From Macrostomum hystrix (lineage: Eukaryota; Animalia; Platyhelminthes): DNA of 64,000 nt. The notes below the pieces were generated by a model. It searched no databases, was not told where the DNA came from, and was given only the letters and a program-made list of their open reading frames with translations. The stretch covers positions 4,092,001 through 4,156,000 of the forward strand of contig CATNEN010000005.1 in NCBI GenBank assembly GCA_950097015.1, written 5' to 3'. Shown here piece after piece: positions 7,511-26,701 of the stretch. Position 1 is the stretch's first letter, and every line of letters starts with the position of its first letter. The position numbers and the translations under genes were made by a program.

Positions 7511-10500
7511 ATGAAAAGAAAAGAAGACAACGAACTGTCATTGTCAAGATCATCGGAGTCAGATGAGGATGCCGACGACCATGATACTAAGGCTGCTCAC
7601 GCTCCTTTGTCTGCCAAACGTCCTCGCCAGTCGGTTGACAATTCAATCGCGTCAACTAGTCGCGCTGTCCAATCCATGATGGTTAAAATGGGTCACAAAG
7701 AAGGCGAAGGTCTCGGCAGGTATAAACAGGGCATTGTTGAGCCGGTGCAAGCTCAAACTATAAAAGGTCGTTCTGGTCTGGGCTTCACATCTTTGTCGGC
7801 TACGAAAAGGCCGGAATTTGTATGGCACGAAGGTGACGATCCAATAGTTGTGCAGCGTCAAGTTAACTGGCTAGCTAACAGTGACGAACCTATTCCATTT
7901 AATGGTGACGCCGACGTGTTGCTTAGCAACTGGATGTCCATCGACTTGGCCAAGATGGTATTGAATGACGAGACTGAGTTTGTTGCACCAGATGTACTAT
8001 CGGGTGTGTTAGAGTGCAAACAGTTTTTAGACGACATGTCCAATAAGGAATTGATGGATTCTAGATCAAGAAGTAATCCCTACGAGACAGTAAGTATTCT
8101 ATTGAAATTATCCACCTTTAAATTGAGCTCTGAATGTTAAATACAGACCCCTTCATCTAAAATTATTAGATCCCTAAGTATACTATCCTCAGATCGCTGA
8201 TTTTAAAATATTCAGGTCCCTTCATCTGTCTACAGCCATCAGATCCCTTCATCTACAATTTTCAGGTCCCTAAATCTAAAATCTTCAGATCCCTGAATCT
8301 CCAATCTTCAGGTCCCTAAATCTAAAATCTTCAGATCATTTAATCTAAAATCTTAAGATCCCTGAATCTACAATCTTCAGATCCCTGAATCTACAATCTT
8401 CAGGTCCCTAAATCTAAAATCTTCAGATCATTTAATCTATAATCTTCAGATCCCTGAATCTACAATCTTCAGATCCATGAATCTACAATCTTCAGATCCC
8501 TGAATCTACAATTTTTAGATCCCTGAATCTACAGCCCTCTGATCCTTTCATCATCAAACGTGTAAGTGCTCTTCATTTCCATTTTTTACCTACGTTCAGG
8601 TGAAGAACGCCATCTTCATGAATCGAGCCGCATTGAAAGTGGCCGAAGTAGACGCCGTATTGCAATTCACAATGTCTCGCCCGTTCGATTCGGACGAAAT
8701 TCTCACCTTCGCCGACATCTGCGCTGGTCCCGGAGGTTTCACAGAATATCTTCTATGGCGCAATCGGCCAGACGATCAACGCGGCCCCAGAGCCAAGGGA
8801 TTCGGTTTGACGCTGAAAGGAAAATGTGATTTTCGTCTTAGCGACATGCTAGCCGGGGCGCCGGAATATTTTTATCCCTACTACGGGCCAAACGATGAGA
8901 GCGACGGCGACATCTTTCTGGAAGAGAATATGCTCGGCTTTAGAGATCTCATTATGGCCAACACTGCCAATCTGGGAGTGCATCTAGTTACAGCTGACGG
9001 AGGTTTCTCAGTGAGTTAAACATTGTTGAACCTTTCAACATAAGCTAGTTCTTTCCGTGTTTTAAAGATTTCTGCTTCAGTGTTCTCAAGATTTCTACTT
9101 CAGTGTTCTCAAGATTTCTGCTTCAGTGTTCTCAGGATTTCTGCTTCAGTGTTCTCGAGATTTCTGCTTCAGTGTTCTCAAGATTTCTGCTTCAGTGTTC
9201 TCAGGATTTCTGCTTCAGTGTTCTCAAGATTTCTGCTTCAGTGTTCTCAAGATTTCTACTTTAGTGTTCTCAGGATTTCTGCTTCGGTATTCCAAATACT
9301 TCAGCTTCAGTGTTCTGTAGTTCAGGTGTTCAGTGTTCTGTAGTTCAGGTCTTCAGTGTTCTGTAGTTTAGGTGGTCAGTGTTCTGTAGTTCAGGTCTTC
9401 AGTGTTCTGTAGTTCATGTCTTCAGTGTTCTGTAGTTCAGGGCTTCAGTGTTCTGTAGTTCAGGGCTTCAGTGTTCTGTAGTTCAGGTCTTCAGTGTTCT
9501 GTAGTTCAGGTCTTCAGTGTTCTGGAGCTCAGGTGTTCAGTGTTCTGTAGTTCATGTGTTCAGTGTTCTGGAGCTCAGGTCTTCAGTGTTCTGGAGCTCA
9601 GGGCTTCAGTGTTCAGAACTGGCAGTATTGTAATAGTTCCAACATAATCAAATATCAGGTTGAAGGCCAAGAAAACATTCAAGAGATTCTCAGCAAGCAG
9701 TTGTACCTGTGCCAGGCTCTCACAGCCATGCTAATATTGCGCCAAGGTGGCAGCTTCCTGTGCAAATTGTTCGACGTTTTCACTGAATTCAGCGCGGGCC
9801 TAATGTACATTCTCTACTTGGCGTTCGATCAGTTCGCCCTGTTCAAACCCGCCACTAGCAGGCCGGCTAATTCAGAGCGTTACGTCGTCTGTCGAGGCTA
9901 TCGAAGGAAACAGTCGGAAGGACTTGTAAAATATCTGCTATTAGTAAATGCCAAGATTAATCTATTAAAGACTAAGGCGGCACATTTGCCCCAATCGGAA
10001 AGACGCGATGTACAGGTGAGAGAACTGATTTGCTAGCTATATTCCCCCATTTAGCTAAAAATCTGTCCCCATTATTAAGATTGCGGGTCGAATCAAACCA
10101 AGAATCGTAGCTAGAATTGCAGCTGGTGTCGTAGCTAGAATCGTAATAGGAATCGCAACAGGAGTCATAGCTAGAATCGAAGGAGGAGTCATAGCTAGAA
10201 TCGCAGCAGGTGTCATAGCTAGAATCGCAGCAGGTGTCATAGCTAGAATCGCAGCAGGAGTCATAGCTAGAATCGCAGCAGGAGTCATAGCTAGAATCGC
10301 AGCAGGTGTCGTAGCTAGAATTGCAGCAGGTGTCATAGCTAGACTCGCAGCAGGAGTCATAGCTAGAATCGCAGCAGGAGTCATAGCTAGAATCGCAGCA
10401 GGTGTCATAGCTAGAATCGCAGCAGGAGTCATAGCTAGAATCGCAGCAGGTGTCATAGCTAGAATCGCAGCAGGAGTCATAGCTAGAATCGCAGCAGGAG

Positions 10501-16529: not shown

Positions 16530-18830
16530 CACCTGATATCCCAGCTCTCACTTGAAACCCCAGCTCTCACTTAAAACCCCAGCTCTCTCCTGAAACCCCA
16601 GCTCTCACCTGAAACCCCAGCTCCACTTAAAACCCCAGCTCTCACCTGAAACCCCAGCTCCACTTATAAAAACCCCAGCTCTCACCTGAAACCCCAGCTC
16701 CACTTAAAACCCCAGCTCTCACATGAAACCCCAGCTCTCACCTGAAACCCCAGCTCTCACTTGAAACCCCAGCTCTCACCTGAAACCCCAGCTCCACTTA
16801 TAAAAACCCCAGCTCTCACCTGAAACCCCAGCTCCACTTAAAACCCCAGCTCTCACATGAAACCCCAGCTCTCACCTGAAACCCCAGCTCTCACCTGAAA
16901 CCCCAGCTCCACTTATAAAAACCCCAGCTCTCACCTGAAACCCCAGCTCCACTTAAAACCCCAGCTCTCACATGAAACCCCAGCTCTCACCTGAAACCCC
17001 AGCTCTCACCTGAAACCCCAGCTCCACTTATAAAAACCCCAGCTCTCACCTGAAACCCCAGCTCCACTTAAAACCCCAGCTCTCACCTGAAACCCCAGCT
17101 CCACTTATAAAAACCCCAGCTCTCACCTGAAACCCCAGCTCCACTTAAAACCCTAGCTCTCACATGAAACCCCAGCTCTCACCTGAAACCCCAGCTCTCA
17201 CCTGAAACCCCAGCTCCACTTATAAAAACCCCAGCTCTCACCTGAAACCCCAGCTCCACTTAAAACCCCAGCTCTCACATGAAACCCCAGCTCTCACCTG
17301 AAACCCCAGCTCTCACCTGAAACCCCAGCTCCACTTATAAAAACCCCAGCTCTCACCTGAAACCCCAGCTCCACTTAAAACCCCAGCTCTCACCTGAAAC
17401 CCCAGCTCCACTTATAAAAACCCCAGCTCTCACCTGAAACCCCAGCTCTCACTTGAAACCCCAGCTCTCACCTGAAACCCCAGCTCCACTTAAAACCCCA
17501 GCTCTCACATGAAACCCCAGCTCTCACTTGAAACCCCAGCTCTCACCTGAAACCCCAGCTCCACTTATAAAAACCCCAGCTCTCACCTGAAACCCCAGCT
17601 CGACTTAAAACCCCAGCTCTCACATGAAACCCCAGCTCTCACCTGAAACCCCAGCTCTCACCTGAAACCTCAGCTCTCACCTGAAACCCCAGCTCCACTT
17701 ATAAAAACCCCAGGTCTCACCTGAAACCCCAGCTCCACTTAAAACCCCAGCTCTCACATGAAACCCCAGCTCTCACCTGAAACCCCAGCTCTCACCTGAA
17801 ACCCCAGCTCCACTTATAAAAACCCCAGCTCTCACCTGAAACCCCAGCTCCACTTAAAACCCCAGCTCTCACCTGAAACCCCAGCTCCACTTATAAAAAC
17901 CCCAGCTCTCACCTGAAACCCCAGCTCCACTTAAAACCCCAGCTCTCACATGAAACCCCAGCTCTCACCTGAAACCCCAGCTCTCACTTGAAACCCCAGC
18001 TCTCACCTGAAACCCCAGCTCCACTTATAAAAACCCCAGCTCTCACCTGAAACCCCAGCTCCACTTAAAACCCCAGCTCTCACATGAAACCCCAGCTCTC
18101 ACCTGAAACCCCAGCTCTCACCTGAAACCCCAGCTCCACTTATAAAAACCCCAGCTCTCACCTGAAACCCCAGCTCCACTTAAAACCCCAGCTCTCACAT
18201 GAAACCCCAGCTCTCACCTGAAACCCCAGCTCTCACCTGAAACCCCAGCTCCACTTATAAAAACCCCAGCTCTCACCTGAAACCCCAGCTCCACTTAAAA
18301 CCCCAGCTCTCACCTGAAACCCCAGCTCCACTTATAAAAACCCCAGCTCTCACCTGAAACCCCAGCTCCACTTAAAACCCCAGCTCTCACATGAAACCCC
18401 AGCTCTCACCTGAAACCCCAGCTCTCACTTGAAACCCCAGCTCTCACCTGAAACCCCAGCTCCACTTAAAACCCCAGCTCTCACCTGAAACCCCAGCTCC
18501 ACTTATAAAAACCCCAGCTCTCACCTGAAACCCCAGCTCCACTTAAAACCCCAGCTCTCACATGAAACCCCAGCTCTCACCTGAAACCCCAGCTCTCACT
18601 TGAAACCCCAGCTCTCACCTGAAACCCCAGCTCCACTTATAAAAACCCCAGCTCTCACCTGAAACCCCAGCTCTCACTTGAAACCCCAGCTCTCACCTGA
18701 AACCACAGCTCTCACTTGAAACCCAAGCTCTCACCTGAAACCCAAGCTCTCACTTGAAACCCAATGTCTGACCTGAAACTCCATGTCTGACCTAACACCT
18801 GAAACCTCCCACTCACACCTGAAACCAGGA
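16530..18830. repeat. 2.3-kb satellite with an approximately 19-bp monomer (gaaaccccagctctcacct) and higher-order variants
   Basis: Monomer variants (ctctcacct, ctccactta, ctccacttataa, ctctcacat, ctctcactt) recur in ordered blocks of about 115 bp. Confidence 0.95.
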
Positions 18831-19008
18831 CTTTAACTTGAAACTTAAGCTCTTTGTGTCTTTTGTGTCCTTAAGTTAGAAAAAACTTTCTATTTATTCC
18901 AGCGTTTTCTTCGGCTTTCATTGGACAATTTTTTTATCAATTTACTTTTTCCACCCAAATTTCAGCCCTAAACTAGATTTTTATAAATAATAATTAAATA
19001 AAATCAAA

Positions 19009-22000
19009 ATGCCCAACGAGCCATTCAATCTGCCGGAGAATCTGCAAGATCTGCCAGCTCAGGCCGACGACGGCACTGAGCCCGTACTGCGCCAGCACTA
19101 TCGACGCCCGCCAGAGAACGCTGAGCCTGACAGATTCCGTGCCAGATTGCAAACCGCAGCCGAAGAGTTTGGTTTGAGACTGAATCAACTGCCTGGCAGG
19201 CTGCTTGTACCACAATACGATATTGTCATCATTGGCGATAGAATTAGCGACGTAACCGATATGGAATCTGTTAGGCAGATTATTGAGGAAAATATTCGAT
19301 TGGATGATAATACAGCGCCCAGGGTGCTTATTAACGAGCCACTGGCTGGCCAGTCCGTGAGTATTTATTTTATTGACTTTTTCTTTAGGTAATTAGAACA
19401 GGCTGTCGATATTAAACTAATATTATTTAGTCTAAGACTATCGTCCTTGCCCTACAACGCTAGTTTATTGTTACCATTTGCGCCATAGACAACACTGTAC
19501 TGGTTTTTTCCCCTCAGTCTTAAAACTTCTGCTCTTAAGTCTTAATTGATAAATACGTAAGGACCCAATTAATAGGTAGCATCAGCTACACGTGCCCTAT
19601 TGTAGAATAGGATTTCTCTATTTTCGTATGTAATTTTCCCTATTTCGGAATGGGATTTCCCTATTTTGGAATTGGATTTCTCTATTTTGGAATAGGATTT
19701 CCCCATTCTGGAATAGGATTTCCCCATTCTGGAATAGGATTTCCATATTTTTTATGGGATTTCCCCATTTTGGAATGGGATTTACCTTTTTAGCAATGGG
19801 GTTTTCCTACTTCGGAATGGGATTTCCCTATTTTGGAATGGGATTTTCCTACTTTTTCGTGGTATATCCTTATTTTTAGAATGGATTTCCCCATTTTGGA
19901 ATTGGATTTCCCCATTCTGGAATAGGATTTCCCCATTCTGGAATAGGATTTCCCCATTCTGGAATAGGATTTCCATATTTTTTATGGGATTTCCCCATTT
20001 TGGAATGGGATTTACCTTTTTAGCAATGGGGTTTTCCTACTTCGGAATGGGATTTCCCTATTTTGGAATGGGATTTTCCTACTTTTTCGTGGTATATCCT
20101 TATTTTTAGAATGGATTTCCCCATTTTGGAATAGAATTTCCCCATTTTGAATTGCGATTTCCCTAATTTATTTTTACAAATTTTATTTTTTAATGTGATT
20201 AGAATTGGATTTAATATTTTCTAATGCGATGTTTTTGTTTATAATCAATAATATTATGCAGTTTAAATACTCTGAAAGCTTTATTCTACCACTTATTTAT
20301 TATCTTAGGCCACTTTTCTATCCTGGCTAAACGAAGCCAACCAGCGGAGCACTTTTGTTCTCATCTATGTGACCAACAGCTTCCTGAATAATGAGCAACG
20401 TATGCAATACATGGAAGAACTGTACAATGAGAGCGTGTCTGGCCCAACAGAGCGACGATTTCGCATTGTGCCAGTGTTCGCACCGGATGTGGACATTAAC
20501 AACGCCGAAAACATGTCCATTCCGGAGGCGGCGCTGTTTAGAAATCTAGGCGGATTGCCGCTCGATAGGGATGGCCAAACTGGTCAGCTAAGGATGCGTC
20601 CCATGCAGGTGAAGATTTTTGGACAACTGACTTAAATCTAGTCATTTTAATAGTGACTCATTTAGCCAATCTAAATCTGAAACTCAGTTTCAAATGATCG
20701 TCCTAGAACGCTACGACCCATTTATAATGATTTTTTTTCCGAAAAAAGCTATGACCCTCCTGAAAAAGCATGACCCAGCTCATAATGACCCAATTCTGAA
20801 ACACGATGACCCAGTTCATAATGACCCAATTCTGAAACACGATGACCCAGTTCATAATGACCCAATTCTGAAACACGATGACCCAGTTCATAATGACCCA
20901 ATTCTGAAACACCATGACCCAGTTCATAATGACCCAATTCTGAAACACCATGACCCAGTTCATAATGACCCAATTCTGAAACACGATGACCCAGTTCATA
21001 ACGACCCAATTCTGAAACACGATGACCCAGTTCATAATGACCCAATTCTGAAACACGATGACCCAGTTCATAATGACCCAATTCTGAAACACCATGACCC
21101 AGTTCATAATGACCCAATTCTGAAACACCATGACCCAGTTCATAACGACCCAATTCTGAAACACCATGACCCAGTTCATAATGACCCAATTCTGAAACAT
21201 GATGACCCAGTTCATAATGACACAATTCTCGAACACGATGACCCAGTTCATAATGACCCAATTCTCAAACACGATGACCCAGTTCATAATGACCCAATTC
21301 TGAAACAGCATGACCCAATTCTCAAACACGATGACCCAGTTCATAATGACCCAATTCTGAAGCACCATGACCCACCAATCCCAATCGCCCAGATCGGCAA
21401 TCTGCGCCAACTGCTGCGCACTCGCCTAAATCAGCGCCGCAGTCGTGAGGATGCCCAAGTTGAATCTGTGCGCGACTACGCTACCAGGACTACAAATAAC
21501 GAAGGCCGCCGCCTACTGCAACAGATGAATAGCTTTTTTACTGAGCGCATGCGCCTCAGACCTGAGGATGTTAAAGCTAAGCTGCATCCATTTTACCAGC
21601 TGCTTGAACAATTCGGCGAGCCGCCAGCTCAGGGCCAGACAAACACCGACAGATTGCTAGCTCAAGAAGTTGGCAGCCTGCAGACGCCTATTGATTCTGG
21701 CCACGCCACAATGGCCACGGTTAGTAGGGGCAATTCGCAGATTGAAGATTTGCGCGGTGAAGTTTCTTTGCCGAGTGCGCAGCAACAGCAGCAGCAGACT
21801 ATGCAGCAACAGCAGCAGCAGACTATGCAGCAACAGCAGCAGCAGGGAGCAGCAGCAGCAGCAGCAGCTCCGGCCTCAATAAATCTGGATCAAGTGATTA
21901 ATAATTTGGACCAGCTCTCATTGGGCAGCGCCAATCAAGTTAGCGTTCGCGGTAATACTGTACACGTACACGTCACCTACGTTACACAATTTGTTTCCGG

Positions 22001-22091
22001 AGCTACCGAAGCTCATCAGCACGTCGACGGTGGCGATGGCAATCAAGGAGACGGCGCTGGTGCCACCGGCGGAGGAGCTGCTCGGCCTTAA
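19009..22091 (+). CDS. TIR-domain adaptor with a C-terminal RHIM-like motif (TRIF/TICAM-like), 3 exons, about 448 aa
   Basis: Exons are 19009-19356, 20309-20608 and 21393-22091, all phase 0. TIR-like segments QYDIVII, LSWLNEANQRSTFVLIYVTNSF, RFRIVPVF and AALFRNLGGLPLD resemble the TICAM1 TIR as I recall it (LSCLQDAIDHSAFIILLLTSNF; TASLLSGLVRLD). The RHIM-like motif is VINNLDQLSLGSANQVSV. Donor 2 (GTGAAG) is weak. Confidence 0.65.
19600..20165. repeat. 21-bp minisatellite (atttccccattctggaatagg) with an approximately 230-bp internal block duplication, TIR gene intron 1
   Basis: The block ttccatattttttatgggat... occurs at 19741 and again at 19971. Confidence 0.85.
20765..21375. repeat. 36-bp minisatellite (gacccagttcataatgacccaattctgaaacacgat), TIR gene intron 2
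   Basis: About 17 units ending just before the acceptor at 21391-21392. Confidence 0.95.
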
Positions 22092-22978
22092 AGAAAAAAT
22101 GTTTATAAATTACTTCATGGGGTTTTTAAGACTATTAAATTTTTTTACTTTTATTGTCTATGGTAAAAAGTATCACTGATGCGATTCATCAGTGGTCTAT
22201 GGCCGACACTGGTTTTCACTAAAATTAAGATATTCTACACTGGTTTTGTTTTTTCAATGTCTATGGTTAAAATTCCTTGTTTTGACATTGTGATCCACAC
22301 GTCGTCTATGGTCTAAGCTGGTTTTGTTTATATACTTCGTTTTGTTCATAGTCTATGGTTAAAAAATTCTTGATCTTTACTGGAGATCCGTTCGTAGTCT
22401 ATGGTTGAAACTGATATTTTCTGTGACTTAAGTGAATTTCGAGACAAAATTACTTCCTAGACTATGGTTAACAATCTGCTAATAATATTTACAAGCAGAA
22501 TGAATCTGTTTCATATTTTAACTCTATGGCCTAAATTATGAGTGTACAGATTTGTTACTAAGGCCCAAAAAGGCTTGCTTTTCTCTTTGGCTAAATTCAA
22601 ATGACAAATTGAATATGCGAAAATGAGTTTTATGTTTTACTGTTTTTGTGACAGTTTTCTATGATTTTTAGCAAAGCTAAAAAAATGAACCCCGTCTTTT
22701 TTATATTTTTATGTAATTTGAAACATGCTATTTTGTCTATTATAAGCAAACTAAAATGTTTGTTATATCTTGTTATCTTGTTATATTTGTTATAGGGTAT
22801 TTTGATGCTTCGTTTTGTGCACCGATTTATTATTTATACAATCGTCAGTTATGCTCGTACTAACCGTTTTTTTCTTAGATCGTAAATAATAACCTTAAGA
22901 AAGCCTAAATCATGCTTAAAATATGTTAGTAGATAATTTACGTTTTTTATGCCACAATAAATTGATGTGAAATCAACT

Positions 22979-23499: not shown

Positions 23500-23925
23500 T
23501 GTATGACCAGATTGTTTAATGAGTAGTCTGTATGACCAGATTGTTTAATGAGTAGTCTGTATGACCAGATTGTAATTAGCAGTCTGTATGACCAGATTGT
23601 GTAATTAGCAGTCTGTATGACCAGATTGTAATTAGCAGTCTGTATGACCAGATTGTGTAATTAGCCGTCTGTATGACCAGATTGTATAATTAGCCGTCTG
23701 AATGACCAGATTGTATAATTAGCCGTCTGAATGACCAGATTGTATAATTAGCAGTCTGTATGACCAGATTGTGTAATTAGCCGTCTGAATGACCAGATTG
23801 TATAATTAGCCGTCTGAATGACCAGATTGTATAATTAGCAGTCTGTATGACCAGATTGTGTAATTAGCCGTCTGAATGACCAGATTGTATAATTAGCAGT
23901 CTGTATGACCAGATTGTGTAATTTA
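23500..23925. repeat. 29-bp minisatellite (gtctgtatgaccagattgtgtaattagca)
   Basis: About 14 tandem units. Confidence 0.9.
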
Positions 23926-23996: not shown

Positions 23997-26701
23997 GCGG
24001 TTCTGCTGATTCAACGCAGCTCGCAGTCTTCGCCGCTAGAGCACATCGCTGCTGACCTACCCGATGCCGAATTTAGCATAGGCAAAGACAGCGCAGAAAA
24101 TTATTACTTTAATGCTAGACTATTTGGCTGCAATGGTAGGCCGGATTGATTTAGAGTAATAAAAAATTTAATAGTACAGTCAAATTTTTTAGGCAGAGAA
24201 GAAGAATTAAGTTGTGGCGTTTACAGAAAAGTCTGTAAATTAGACAGTAAAATGTGTTGTAGACAGCAGTAGATTGAATTGATTAGAGTAGAAAATTGTA
24301 AATTAGAGTTTACTGACTTGTAGATTTTGTACGGTAGAGTAACCAGAATAGTAAATTGTGTAGATTAAACAGAATAGTAAATTGTGTTAAGTAAAAATAA
24401 TTGTAGATTATGTGGAGTAGACAGAATAGCATATTGTATAGGGTAGACAGAATAGAAGATTGTATAGGGTAGACAGAATAGCATATTGTATAGGGTAGAC
24501 AGAATAGAAGATTGTATAGGGTAGACAGAATAGCAGATTGTGTAGAGTAGACTGAATAGCAGATTGTGTAGGGTAGACAGAATAGCAGATTGTATAGAGT
24601 AGACTGAATAGCAGATTGTGTAGAGTAGACAGAATAGCAGATTGTATAGAGTAGACTGAATAACAGATTGTGTAGAGTAGACAGAATAGCAGATTGTATA
24701 GAGTAGACTGAATAGCAGATTGTATAGAGTAGACTGAATAGCAGATTGTATAGAGTAGACTGAATAGCAGATTGTATAGAGTAGACTGAATAGCAGATTG
24801 TGTAGAGTAGACAGAATAGCAGATTGTATAGAGTAGACTGAATAGCAGATTGTGTAGAGTAGACAGAATAGCAGATTGTATAGAGTAGACTGAATAACAG
24901 ATTGTGTAGAGTAGACAGAATAGCAGATTGTATAGAGTAGACTGAATAGCAGATGTATAGAGTAGACAGAATAGAAGATTGTATAGGGTAGACAGAATAG
25001 CAGATTGTATAGGGTAGACAGAATAGCAGATTGTGTAGAGTAGACTGAATAGCAGATTGTGTAGGGTAGACAGAATAGCAGATTGTATAGAGTAGACTGA
25101 ATAGCAGATTGTGTAGAGTAGACAGAATAGCAGATTGTATAGAGTAGACTGAATAACAGATTGTGTAGAGTAGACAGAATAGCAGATTGTATAGAGTAGA
25201 CTGAATAGCAGATTGTATAGAGTAGACTGAATAGCAGATTGTATAGAGTAGACTGAATAGCAGATTGTGTAGAGTAGACAGAATAGCAGATTGTATAGAG
25301 TAGACTGAATAGCAGATTGTGTAGAGTAGACAGAATAGCAGATTGTATAGAGTAGACTGAATAACAGATTGTGTAGAGTAGACAGAATAGCAGATTGTAT
25401 AGAGTAGACTGAATAGCAGATGTATAGAGTAGACTGAATAGCAGATTGTATAGAGTAGACTGAATAGCAGATTGTGTAGGGTAGACAGAATAGCAGATTG
25501 TGTAGGGTAGACTGAATAGCAGATTGTGTAGGGTAGACTGAATAGCAGATTGTGTAGAATAGACAGAATTGTAGATTGTGTAGAGTAGACTGAATAGCAG
25601 ATTGTGTAGAGTAGACTGAATAGCAGATTGTGTAGAGTAGACTGAATAGCAGATTGTGTAGAGTAGACTGAATAGCTGATTTTGTAGAGTAGAATGAAAA
25701 GTAGATTATGTAGAGTAGACAAAAAAGTTGATTGTGTAGAGCTGATGGAATAAAAAATTGTTTTTATTAAATGGGCAGAGCAGTATATAAATTTGTTTAG
25801 AGTAACTAGAGAAGCAGGTTGTCTTGAACAGGCTACAAAATTATTGCTTGCTAATTTGATTGATTGATTGACAAGTATAGCACACCAACCCGCAGCTCTG
25901 TGCCGTCATTTAGCCAGCCTAGCCGATCAGGCTGCCGCCTTCATTCAACAAGCTGCCATCCGCAGTGCTAAGCGTGGCTGTTTACAATGCTCTCGTCTAC
26001 TGCTGCAACATCAACAGAAAAGTCTTCTAGTCCTACCTAATCGTCTTTTAGTAGCATTAGCATCTGCAGCTTCATCCTCTCCTAGTAGCTTATTTATTAG
26101 TCAAATATTCGACAATCTACTGCCAAAAACATCGTCAGCTACAATCCTATTGGCTAGTCGGCCCTGGCTATGGCCCATAGAATCGCTAGACTTTGCCTGG
26201 TTTCATCGCCTACTAAGCATACTATGTCGAGCAATTTCTCTTGACGCCCTGTTAGCTTGGCTATCCACCCTAGGTGGGGGCTTCTCTAATCTAGGCGACG
26301 CATTCTCCGACGCAGCCGCTATAGCCGGCGAAATCGCTTGCCGACAATTTCGCGTCGCCATGGAATTAGACGACGCCGAATTGCAGTGCCGCTGTTGCAT
26401 CTGGTACGCGCAGAGTCTGCTACAGCGCGGCCAGATTAGGCGAAGCGCCCGATTGTTACGCTCGGCTTATGTGGCCGCTACAAAGCGTCCGGATGTGTCA
26501 CGTGATCAGCGCATCAGGCTCATGTGCCTAGGCGTATGGCGTAAACTGCAGGCGGCACAAATTAAGCGCAGATTAAATCGTATTAATCACAAGCTAAATG
26601 GCGACTATAGGCAACTGAAAAAACAGCAATATGACGATGAAAAACGCATGTATCGATCATATGATACGTCAGCCATTGTTGGTGCAATAATGGCCGTTTG
26701 A
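23997..26701 (+). CDS. DUF4807 / C. elegans F58A4.6-like conserved protein, at least 2 exons, no genomic ATG found
   Basis: Exon 23997-24135 (AVLLIQRSS...FGCN) joins in phase 1 to 25881-26701. It contains LAWLSTLGGGFSNLGD and CRCCIWYAQSLLQRG, which match the family signature as I recall it (WLSTLGGAFSALG ... RC..YAA.SL.QRG). Confidence 0.7.
24400..25740. repeat. 26-bp minisatellite (tagcagattgtatagagtagactgaa), DUF4807 intron
   Basis: About 50 units. This array produces the 470-aa pseudo-ORF. Confidence 0.95.

What the first reader, a model, noticed from the sequence alone, without database searches (positions are those of the whole stretch)
19009..22091. TRIF/TICAM-like adaptor (TIR plus C-terminal RHIM-like amyloid motif) in a probable flatworm
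Seen: the spliced product has a TIR-like fold pattern, a Q/A-rich linker and VINNLDQLSLGSANQVSV (21894-21947). That motif aligns without gaps to the RIPK1 RHIM as I recall it (TIYNSTGIQIGAYNYMEI): I2, N4, LSLG versus IQIG, N14 and alternating hydrophobics. It is followed by another beta-prone strand, VHVHVTYVTQFV. There is also an N-terminal PPENAE fitting the TRAF6-binding PxExx(acidic) pattern. Established: TIR+RHIM is the architecture of vertebrate TRIF and amphioxus TICAM, and RHIM/cRHIM motifs nucleate signalling amyloids (necrosome, Drosophila Imd). Inference: this is a TRIF-like amyloid-signalling immune or cell-death adaptor in a lineage generally regarded as lacking a canonical TLR pathway, which implies unidentified RHIM partners in this genome.
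Basis: partly seen in the sequence, partly recalled or inferred. Interest (0 to 1): 0.8.

Follow-up and report, generated by a model that had tools for sequence, protein, structure and literature searches.

The report
Flatworm TIR protein with RHIM-like tail
A Macrostomum flatworm, from a phylum without Toll-like receptors, expresses a genus-restricted protein that joins a very divergent TIR signalling domain to a conserved C-terminal strand motif resembling the RHIM amyloid motif of vertebrate cell-death adaptors; the resemblance is canonical in the sister species M. lignano but degenerate in this genome, and amyloid formation is untested.

Summary
A three-exon gene (19009-19356, 20309-20608, 21393-22091, all phase 0) encodes 448 aa. 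RNA contigs span both GT..AG joints and carry the Macrostomum spliced leader at 18965. M. lignano has a syntenic ortholog (P0001) with the same intron positions.

No sequence library sees a TIR domain. Four fold or language-model searches on low-confidence models (pLDDT 49-56) nevertheless converge on TIR (TRAM Z 9.0, TRIF 8.9, RPS4 8.6). I put the TIR fold at about 0.85.

The C-terminal motif is at the stated coordinates. The M. lignano ortholog reads VNNPENVQVGSANQL and matches the published RHIM pattern [IV]Q[ILV]GxxNx[MLI] exactly (87 of 200,000 shuffles). The window protein has LSLG and fails three of the six defined positions. The tetrad stretch is the least conserved part of the tail (33% identity). 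The 32 residues after it are 88% identical, against a 61-65% background.

Pfam RHIM gives no hit and no partner was found. TRIF homology is not supported: no TRIF-NTD, no pLxIS, and the TRAF6 motif is at chance level and absent from the ortholog.

Verdict: a TIR adaptor with a TRIF-like layout and a plausible but unproven RHIM-like assembly motif. The scan had not noted it elsewhere.

The parts
18964..19008 (+). Spliced-leader trans-splice acceptor (AG at 18964-18965) and 43-nt 5' UTR (18966-19008)
   Evidence: RNA contigs of X3/X4 start matching at 18965 and carry TGCGAAGACTCAATTTATTGCAT before it. This is the 3' part of the M. lignano SL CGGTCTCTTACTGCGAAGACTCAATTTATTGCATG (PMC8629364). Acceptor context.
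19009..19356 (+). Exon 1 coding part (aa 1-116): disordered N-terminus, one helix and the first half of the TIR-like domain (YDIVIIGD strand, NEPLAGQS loop)
   Evidence: joint 19356>20309 in RNA contigs; same intron position in M. lignano.
19108..19125 (+). PPENAE, the proposed TRAF6-binding motif; judged to be chance
   Evidence: The regex is expected 0.3 times per protein and has no match anywhere in ortholog P0001, which has PPRGDQ at this place.
19357..20308 (+). Intron 1 (GT..AG) with 21-bp/230-bp tandem repeats at 19595-20169
20309..20608 (+). Exon 2 (aa 117-216): second half of the TIR-like domain (STFVLIYVTN strand, YMEELYNES helix, RIVPVF strand)
   Evidence: fold evidence, obtained on ortholog P0001, which is 68% identical over this domain.
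20609..21392 (+). Intron 2 (GT..AG) holding a 36-bp x 15 minisatellite (20770-21321) that is stop-free and in frame with exon 3
   Evidence: removed in RNA contigs.
21393..21629 (+). Start of exon 3 (aa 217-295): long helical segment after the TIR-like domain
   Evidence: The AF2 model of P0001 has helices 210-263 and 267-283 at pLDDT about 55-68. Identity to M. lignano is 57%.
21681..21743 (+). Conserved block QTPIDSGHATMATVSRGNSQI containing DSGHAT (DSGxx[ST]); candidate phospho-regulated or degron-type motif (inference)
   Evidence: 19/21 identical to M. lignano against a 61-65% background; regex hit in both species.
21744..21881 (+). Q/A-rich low-complexity linker (24-nt CAG-rich repeat at 21779-21867)
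   Evidence: 35% identity, 19 gap columns; 24-nt length difference in RNA contigs.
21897..21941 (+). RHIM-like motif INNLDQLSLGSANQV, with the tetrad position LSLG at 21915-21926
   Evidence: The ortholog has VNNPENVQVGSANQL, which matches [IV]Q[ILV]GxxNx[MLI] from PMC9440496. The window fails that pattern at 3 of 6 defined positions. No Pfam RHIM hit.
21927..22022 (+). Most conserved part of the tail: SANQVSVRGNTVHVHVTYVTQFVSGATEAHQH, a beta-prone segment after the tetrad
   Evidence: 28/32 identical to M. lignano. AF2 draws a low-confidence hairpin at P0001 370-374/377-381.
22023..22091 (+). Gly-rich disordered tail and stop codon
   Evidence: 41% identity.

Best explanation
This is an expressed, SL-trans-spliced, three-exon gene of a Macrostomum flatworm. 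It encodes a 448-aa soluble protein known only from this genus.

Shown: the gene model, its expression, positional orthology with M. lignano BOX15_Mlig032176g1, and the conservation profile along the protein.

Supported by fold evidence only: residues about 64-216 form a highly divergent TIR domain.

Inferred: the protein is an innate-immune or cell-death type adaptor that assembles in two ways. Its TIR domain joins TIR-TIR higher-order assemblies with some of the many other TIR proteins of this genome. Its disordered tail carries a roughly 45-residue beta-prone element. That element is QV-NN, a loop, aliphatic-polar-aliphatic-Gly, SANQxSV, RG, TVHVHVTYVxQFV. I propose it stacks as a RHIM-like cross-beta (amyloid) core and recruits or concentrates downstream partners, as the TRIF RHIM does.

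The element is a textbook RHIM in M. lignano (VQVG..N.L, with aliphatic at -9) and a relaxed version (LSLG..N.V) in the window species. The layout is TRIF-like. Common descent from TRIF is not shown, and independent assembly of the architecture is at least as likely.

Sub-probabilities: real expressed gene about 0.98; TIR fold about 0.85; tail acting as a RHIM-like amyloid or homotypic motif about 0.45.
For: Gene and expression: (both joints; SL at 18965, matched to PMC8629364).

Orthology: M. lignano P0001 is 60% identical overall. Flanking genes are the same, G-patch upstream and DUF4807 downstream. Intron positions are the same.

TIR fold:
- ESM feature search top clusters are 'TIR domain-containing' at 0.93.
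- Foldseek against PDB on two AF2 models returns RPS4, PdTIR, TIRAP, BtpA, RUN1, TRIF and MyD88 TIRs, probability about 1.0, target TM 0.45-0.57.
- VIA-align against 48,161 chains gives TRAM Z 9.0, TRIF 8.9/8.6, RPS4 8.6, AtTIR 8.2, IL-18Rbeta 8.1 and TIR-1 8.0.
- Seven of ten nearest ESM Atlas family sets carry TIR_2/TIR.
- The secondary-structure order is beta-alpha x5.

RHIM-like tail:
- P0001 VQVGSANQL matches the published pattern exactly, 87/200,000 composition-preserving shuffles.
- With aliphatic at -9 and Asn at -7 the expectation is 2.7e-6 per protein.
- The aliphatic residue at -9 is a recognised RHIM feature: hRIPK3 I452 relative to G461, TRIF PLIIHHAQM-VQLG, and a 'conserved V/I upstream'.
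- The motif lies in a disordered low-complexity region C-terminal to the TIR, as in TRIF.
- The adjacent 32 aa are 88% conserved against a 61-65% background.
- The protected amyloid core of TRIF also extends far beyond the tetrad.
- RHIM-bearing RIPK1 homologs exist in other Spiralia (PMC12119088), and divergent RHIMs are known in invertebrates (PMC4262963).
Against: No sequence-profile library recognises TIR or RHIM, at E up to 10 in Pfam, NCBIfam, PADLOC and PDB sequences.

The AF2 models are low confidence (pLDDT 49 and 56, only two species in the alignment). CheY- and flavodoxin-like chains are interleaved with TIRs at similar Z.

In the window species the tetrad is LSLG, with only Gly retained. 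The tetrad plus preceding stretch is 33% identical between the two species. In vertebrates the tetrad is the best-conserved RHIM element, and single changes weaken signalling.

The ESM feature search of the tail gave nothing. No other protein of 233-740 aa shares words with the motif, so no partner has been identified.

The extended pattern was defined after seeing the sequences. Its Asn at -7 rests partly on recalled RIPK sequences.
Confidence: 0.45

Rival explanations
1. The protein is a TIR-domain protein, but the RHIM resemblance is coincidental. The selected element is the strand pair after the tetrad (SANQxSVRGxTVHVHVTYVxQFV...). It acts as an ordinary docking peptide or small beta-hairpin, or folds back on the protein, rather than forming an amyloid.
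For: Conservation peaks after the tetrad (88%) and is lowest at the tetrad (33%). The window tetrad LSLG fails the RHIM definition. There is no Pfam RHIM hit, no ESM lead and no partner carrying the motif. The core pattern alone is expected about 5e-4 times per protein, so tens of chance hits are expected per proteome. AF2 draws a hairpin there, at low confidence.
Against: The ortholog matches both the core and the extended RHIM pattern, including aliphatic at -9, Gly and Asn at +3, which are conserved in both species. The position in a disordered tail after a TIR copies TRIF. The alternating aliphatic/polar pattern is kept where the residues differ (V-Q-V versus L-S-L).
Confidence: 0.33
2. 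The protein is an amyloid-templated executioner rather than an adaptor. As in fungal and bacterial NLR / amyloid-motif / effector systems, an upstream receptor carrying a matching motif templates the tail. Templating brings the TIR domains together and switches on NAD+ cleavage and cell death.
For: The TIR fold is supported, with bacterial and plant enzymatic TIRs among the nearest hits. A conserved Glu-Glu-Leu sits in the helix after the third strand in both species (win E152-E153, Mlig E146-E147), about where catalytic TIRs keep their glutamate; this placement is my inference, not an alignment. [quoted passage not shown] Earlier notes of this scan report NWD-type STAND genes in this genome (s1-286101, untested here).
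Against: No receptor with a matching motif is known. The word search was blank, though it covered only proteins of 233-740 aa. The catalytic glutamate could not be placed by a structural alignment. The top VIA hits among TIRs are the non-enzymatic adaptors TRAM and TRIF.
Confidence: 0.1
3. The N-terminal domain is not a TIR. It is another flavodoxin/CheY-like alpha/beta domain, and the protein has no link to immune signalling.
For: There are no TIR profile hits. Model confidence is low. Flavodoxin, CheY-like and GDSL chains appear at Z 7-9 and TM about 0.4-0.5 alongside TIRs.
Against: TIRs are a tiny share of the libraries, yet they take most top ranks in four searches by three methods. The sequence shows YD-IVI at the first strand and a Pro/Gly loop after the second strand, conserved in both species.
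Confidence: 0.1

Closest known systems
Vertebrate TRIF / TICAM-1
   Same: Both are soluble adaptors with a TIR domain followed, after a disordered linker, by a C-terminal RHIM-type motif. TRIF and TRAM TIR structures are among the best structural matches (Z 8.6-9.0). The amyloid core of TRIF also extends well beyond the tetrad (PMC9182532).
   Different: No detectable sequence similarity. No TRIF-NTD, no pLxIS and no conserved TRAF6 motif. The protein is much shorter (448 aa). There are no TLRs upstream in this phylum (PMC8609888). The window tetrad is LSLG rather than VQLG. Amphioxus TICAM is reported without a detectable RHIM (PMC9440496), which argues against simple inheritance of TIR+RHIM from a bilaterian ancestor.
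RHIM of RIPK1/RIPK3/ZBP1 (Pfam PF12721)
   Same: The M. lignano ortholog has the RIPK3-type tetrad VQVG, Asn at +3, Leu at +5 and an aliphatic residue at -9. The motif is embedded in disorder.
   Different: There is no HMM hit. The window species has LSLG. There is no kinase or death domain. The strongly conserved part lies after the tetrad.
Divergent invertebrate RHIMs (Drosophila IMD and PGRP-LC/LE cRHIMs; Branchiostoma RHIM proteins)
   Same: These are RHIM-like motifs with a shifted consensus in innate-immune proteins of invertebrates, occupying positions where other interaction domains usually sit (PMC4262963).
   Different: Those proteins carry PGRP, death or NACHT domains. No flatworm example and no protostome TIR+RHIM example turned up in the papers searched.
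Fungal and bacterial amyloid signalling motifs (HET-s PFD, PP, BASS) attached to effector domains
   Same: A short amyloid-type motif in a disordered tail is attached to a globular signalling or effector domain. RHIM is related to the HET-s PFD.
   Different: Those motifs come in receptor/effector pairs encoded side by side. Here the neighbours are unrelated genes, G-patch and DUF4807, and no paired motif is known.

Membership tests
TIR domain superfamily (Pfam PF01582 / PF13676) | Significant match to a TIR sequence profile | tested here: not met
   No TIR hit at E up to 10 for the exons, for P0001 or for P0001:40-215 in Pfam, NCBIfam or PADLOC. A profile of alignment A2 against PDB sequences gave nothing.
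TIR domain superfamily (Pfam PF01582 / PF13676) | TIR fold: five-stranded parallel sheet with beta-alpha x5 order, closest to solved TIR structures | tested here: met
   Foldseek, VIA-align wide (TRAM 9.0, TRIF 8.9, RPS4 8.6), ESM Atlas by shape (7 of 10 family sets are TIR) and ESM features. The models are low confidence (pLDDT 49-56), and CheY- and flavodoxin-like chains are interleaved.
TIR domain superfamily (Pfam PF01582 / PF13676) | Box 1 ([FY]D-aliphatic strand) and BB-loop Pro/Gly motif | tested here: inconclusive
   YDIVI occurs in both species and NEPLAG(Q/E)S follows strand 2. These were assigned by eye, without a structural alignment.
RHIM (Pfam PF12721) | Core tetrad (V/I)-Q-(V/I/L/C)-G | tested here: not met
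   The window has LSLG at 21915-21926. The M. lignano ortholog P0001 has VQVG at 363-366, which does meet it. Definition taken.
RHIM (Pfam PF12721) | Extended pattern [IV]Q[ILV]GxxNx[MLI] (PMC9440496) | tested here: not met
   Window LSLGSANQV fails 3 of 6 defined positions. P0001 VQVGSANQL matches exactly, 87/200,000 shuffles.
RHIM (Pfam PF12721) | Conserved aliphatic residue upstream of the tetrad (position -9) and location in a disordered region | tested here: met
   Ile in the window and Val in P0001 at -9. References: hRIPK3 I452/G461, TRIF, general statement. pLDDT is about 30 across the tail.
RHIM (Pfam PF12721) | Match to the Pfam RHIM HMM | tested here: not met
   No hit at E up to 10 for exon 3, P0001 or P0001:330-423.
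RHIM (Pfam PF12721) | Forms amyloid and binds other RHIM proteins homotypically | not testable with these tools
   Needs ThT/EM, nucleation reporters and co-assembly assays. The word search for a second motif carrier was blank but covered only proteins of 233-740 aa.
TRIF / TICAM-1 | Sequence orthology of the TIR domain to TICAM, plus the TRIF N-terminal domain | tested here: not met
   phmmer of P0001 against 1.84 billion representatives finds only the Macrostomum cluster. There is no TRIF-NTD or TIR_2 hit. Only about 60 residues precede the TIR.
TRIF / TICAM-1 | TRAF6-binding PxExx(Ar/Ac) and pLxIS signalling motifs | tested here: not met
   PPENAE exists in the window, but the regex is expected 0.3 times per protein and has no match in P0001. 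Neither species has LxIS.
TRIF / TICAM-1 | Acts downstream of TLR3/TLR4 | not testable with these tools
   TLRs are reported absent from M. lignano and other flatworms (PMC8609888), so any upstream partner must be different.

The most novel reading that the evidence does not exclude
Macrostomum flatworms, which lack Toll-like receptors, run a TIR-to-amyloid signalling step of their own. A genus-restricted TIR adaptor nucleates a RHIM-type cross-beta assembly that recruits still unidentified RHIM carriers, for example a spiralian RIPK1-like kinase or a STAND receptor. This would show either that the TIR+RHIM adaptor design arose twice, or that it is much older than chordates. It would also show that a RHIM can work with an aliphatic-Ser-aliphatic-Gly core plus a long conserved C-terminal strand.
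Probability: 0.3. Interest if true: 0.75.

Novelty: new variant of a known kind. Interest (0 to 1): 0.55.

Why it matters
RHIM amyloid signalling is well studied in vertebrate necroptosis and the Drosophila IMD pathway. A TIR+RHIM adaptor has so far been a vertebrate feature (TRIF); amphioxus TICAM is reported without a detectable RHIM.

A TIR protein with a canonical RHIM pattern in M. lignano, and a naturally relaxed version in a congener, would extend TIR-to-amyloid coupling to a protostome phylum that has lost TLRs. It would also provide a natural pair, VQVG versus LSLG, for asking what a RHIM core really needs.

M. lignano has RNAi and transgenesis, so the idea is directly testable. If the motif is not amyloid-forming, the gene remains one more orphan TIR protein in a genome that earlier notes of this scan describe as rich in unusual TIR architectures.

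Tried and rejected
- Sequence libraries: Pfam on single exons and on the ortholog, NCBIfam and PADLOC gave no relevant hits.
- PDB sequence searches: the whole ortholog, the tail, 27-aa motif pieces from both species and the domain profile gave nothing related to TIR or RIPK.
- Exhaustive phmmer against 1.84 billion representatives, plus three word-index searches, found only three M. lignano models of the same gene. P0002 and P0003 are defective gene models. The alignment for folding therefore stayed two species deep and the models stayed at low confidence.
- The ESM feature search of the tail gave no usable hit.
- TRAF6 motif: rejected as chance. pLxIS: absent.
- Six-frame scan of the 64-kb window for further RHIM-like patterns found only this one.
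- Neighbouring genes are unrelated (tyrosine phosphatase, G-patch, DUF4807, BRCT, thyroglobulin/EF-hand), so there is no immune cluster or receptor/effector pairing.
- I looked for Macrostomum or other flatworms among the spiralian RIPK1 homologs in the supplements of PMC12119088 and found no occurrence.
- The amphioxus bbtTICAM paper is not held.
- I could not build a RHIM profile, because no tool returned reference RHIM sequences and I did not type them from memory.
Full report
**Gene model and expression**

The region holds one three-exon gene on the + strand. Exon 1 is 19009-19356, exon 2 is 20309-20608 and exon 3 is 21393-22091. All junctions are phase 0 with GT..AG introns, and the product is 448 aa.

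Assembled contigs of public runs X3 and X4 match the window without mismatches. They skip exactly 19356>20309 and 20605/8>21390/3. The same contigs carry 22-23 extra letters (TGCGAAGACTCAATTTATTGCAT) before 18965. These letters are the 3' part of the 35-nt Macrostomum lignano spliced leader quoted in PMC8629364.

The runs are therefore RNA-derived. The transcript is SL trans-spliced at the AG at 18964-18965 and has a 43-nt 5' UTR. Contigs from a second study (X1, X2) show the same joints with about 1% differences.

**Organism and orthology**

A word-index search with exon 3 found M. lignano BOX15_Mlig032176g1 (P0001, 423 aa) and two defective models of the same gene. Global identity to the window protein is 273/452 columns.

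The M. lignano locus (NIVC01000843.1) has the same neighbours in the same orientation: a G-patch gene upstream and a DUF4807 gene downstream. It also has the same two intron positions. The neighbour proteins are 61-65% identical.

The window therefore comes from another, deeply diverged Macrostomum species. This gene evolves at the local background rate.

An exhaustive phmmer of P0001 against 1.84 billion representative proteins found nothing outside that cluster. At the sequence level the family is restricted to Macrostomum.

**TIR domain**

No profile library recognises it. Pfam, NCBIfam, PADLOC and PDB sequences were all blank at E up to 10. The evidence comes from fold and language-model searches.

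- ESM feature search of P0001 40-215: the top clusters are named TIR, score 0.93.
- AF2 models, built from an alignment only two species deep, have low confidence (pLDDT 49 for the whole protein and 56 for the domain). They show a beta-alpha x5 order.
- Foldseek on both models returns mostly TIR structures: RPS4, PdTIR, TIRAP, BtpA/TcpB, RUN1, TRIF and MyD88. Probability is about 1 and target TM is 0.45-0.57.
- VIA-align against 48,161 chains ranks TRAM (Z 9.0), TRIF (8.9 and 8.6), RPS4 (8.6), AtTIR (8.2), IL-18Rbeta (8.1), TIR-1 (8.0), TIRAP and TIR-STING (7.7) among the top 15. A few CheY-like chains lie between them.
- Seven of the ten nearest ESM Atlas family sets by shape are TIR_2/TIR.

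TIRs are rare in these libraries, so this enrichment is meaningful. By eye, both species keep YDIVI at the first strand and a Pro/Gly loop (NEPLAG) after the second strand.

I put the TIR fold at about 0.85. Subfamily assignment (TRIF versus others) is not possible, because the Z values are tied within 1.

**The C-terminal motif**

The key new fact comes from the ortholog.

- M. lignano reads QQVVNNPENVQVGSANQLSVRGQTVHVHVTYVQQFVAGATEAHQH.
- The window reads DQVINNLDQLSLGSANQVSVRGNTVHVHVTYVTQFVSGATEAHQH.

The published RHIM pattern is [IV]Q[ILV]GxxNx[MLI] (PMC9440496). It matches M. lignano exactly (VQVGSANQL). That happened in 87 of 200,000 composition-preserving shuffles.

Established RHIMs also have an aliphatic residue nine positions before the Gly. 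Examples are hRIPK3 I452 versus G461 in the deep-mutational preprint, TRIF PLIIHHAQM-VQLG, and a general 'conserved V/I upstream'. Both Macrostomum proteins have it. With this residue and Asn at -7 included, the expectation falls to 2.7e-6 per protein for M. lignano. That extended pattern was set post hoc and rests partly on recalled RIPK sequences.

The motif sits in a disordered, low-complexity tail after the TIR, as in TRIF.

**Evidence against a canonical RHIM**

- The window's own tetrad is LSLG. It fails three of the six defined positions of the pattern.
- Conservation is inverted relative to vertebrate RHIMs. The 15 residues ending in the tetrad are 33% identical between the two species. 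The next 32 residues are 88% identical. A separate block, QTPxDSGHATMATVSRGNSQ, is 90% identical. The background is 61-65%.
- In vertebrates the tetrad is the conserved core, and single changes weaken signalling (PMC12119088).
- Pfam RHIM gives no hit. The ESM search of the tail is blank. PDB RIPK fragments are not retrieved.
- No other protein of 233-740 aa shares words with the motif.

What is kept at the variable positions is the aliphatic-polar-aliphatic-Gly pattern (V-Q-V-G versus L-S-L-G). The deep-mutational study stresses aliphatic residues and the flanking glycines as the determinants of nucleation. The protease-protected core of TRIF spans about 44+ residues around the tetrad. A RHIM-like cross-beta core of about 45 residues therefore remains a reasonable reading. 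I give it about 0.45.

**Other claims**

- The TRAF6 motif PPENAE exists (19108-19125). The regex is expected 0.3 times per protein and has no match in the ortholog, which has PPRGDQ there. I treat it as chance.
- Neither species has a pLxIS motif.
- There is no TRIF-NTD. The protein is 'TRIF-like' in layout only.
- The literature held here says TLRs are absent from M. lignano and other flatworms (PMC8609888).
- RIPK1 homologs with a RHIM tetrad exist in several Spiralia (PMC12119088).
- Divergent RHIMs occur in invertebrates such as Branchiostoma and Drosophila (PMC4262963).
- Amphioxus TICAM lacks a detectable RHIM (PMC9440496).
- I found no report of a TIR+RHIM protein in a protostome.

**Mechanism proposed (inferred)**

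The TIR domain joins TIR-TIR assemblies with other TIR proteins. Earlier notes of this scan list many in this genome, including a MyD88-like gene; I did not test these.

The long helix after the TIR may add oligomerisation. The DSGHAT block may be a phospho-regulated or degron-type switch. The tail would form a RHIM-like homotypic assembly that concentrates downstream factors.

Rival readings:
- a non-amyloid conserved docking strand, with the RHIM likeness coincidental (0.33);
- an amyloid-templated TIR NADase executioner in the fungal/bacterial style (0.10);
- a non-TIR flavodoxin-like domain (0.10).

**Verdict**

I class it as a new variant of a known kind (TIR adaptor plus RHIM-type motif) in a TLR-less phylum, with interest 0.55.

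Decisive tests are genus-wide alignment of the tail, a RHIM-profile scan of the proteome without length limits, fibril and nucleation assays with tetrad and strand mutants, an NADase assay, and RNAi in M. lignano.

Noticed in passing
window 17000-18783: A 19-bp minisatellite (CAGCTCTCACCTGAAACCC, about 93 copies, with higher-order periods of 115 and 134) ends about 180 nt upstream of the spliced-leader acceptor of the TIR gene.
   Followed up: no
window 20694-22091 (repeat at 20770-21321): Intron 2 holds a 36-bp x 15 minisatellite that is stop-free and in frame with exon 3. This gives a purely mechanical 465-aa ORF with the 12-aa repeat HNDPILKHDDPV. RNA contigs splice it out.
   Followed up: partly
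window 19595-20169: Intron 1 is filled with 21-bp units arranged in a 230-bp higher-order tandem repeat.
   Followed up: no
window 21779-21867: RNA contigs of X3/X4 covering 21792-22400 carry a 24-nt gap inside the 24-nt CAG-rich repeat that encodes QQQQQQTM. This is either a length allele or an assembly collapse. All contigs break in this repeat.
   Followed up: no
window 21681-21743: The block QTPIDSGHATMATVSRGNSQI is 19/21 identical to M. lignano and contains DSGHAT, which fits the DSGxx[S/T] phosphodegron shape known from IkappaB-type proteins. That comparison is from my own knowledge and is untested.
   Followed up: partly
window 7511-8137 and 25868-26698; L001 931-7992 and 17164-18867: Gene order is conserved with M. 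lignano NIVC01000843.1: G-patch(+FtsJ) gene, TIR gene, DUF4807 gene, all on the same strand, with 61-65% protein identity.
   Followed up: yes
window 23500-23923: A 29-bp tandem repeat (about 15 copies) lies downstream of the gene's 3' UTR.
   Followed up: no
window 18965-19008: The spliced leader ends in ATG. After trans-splicing it opens only a two-codon upstream reading frame (ATG CCC TAA) ahead of the real start at 19009.
   Followed up: yes
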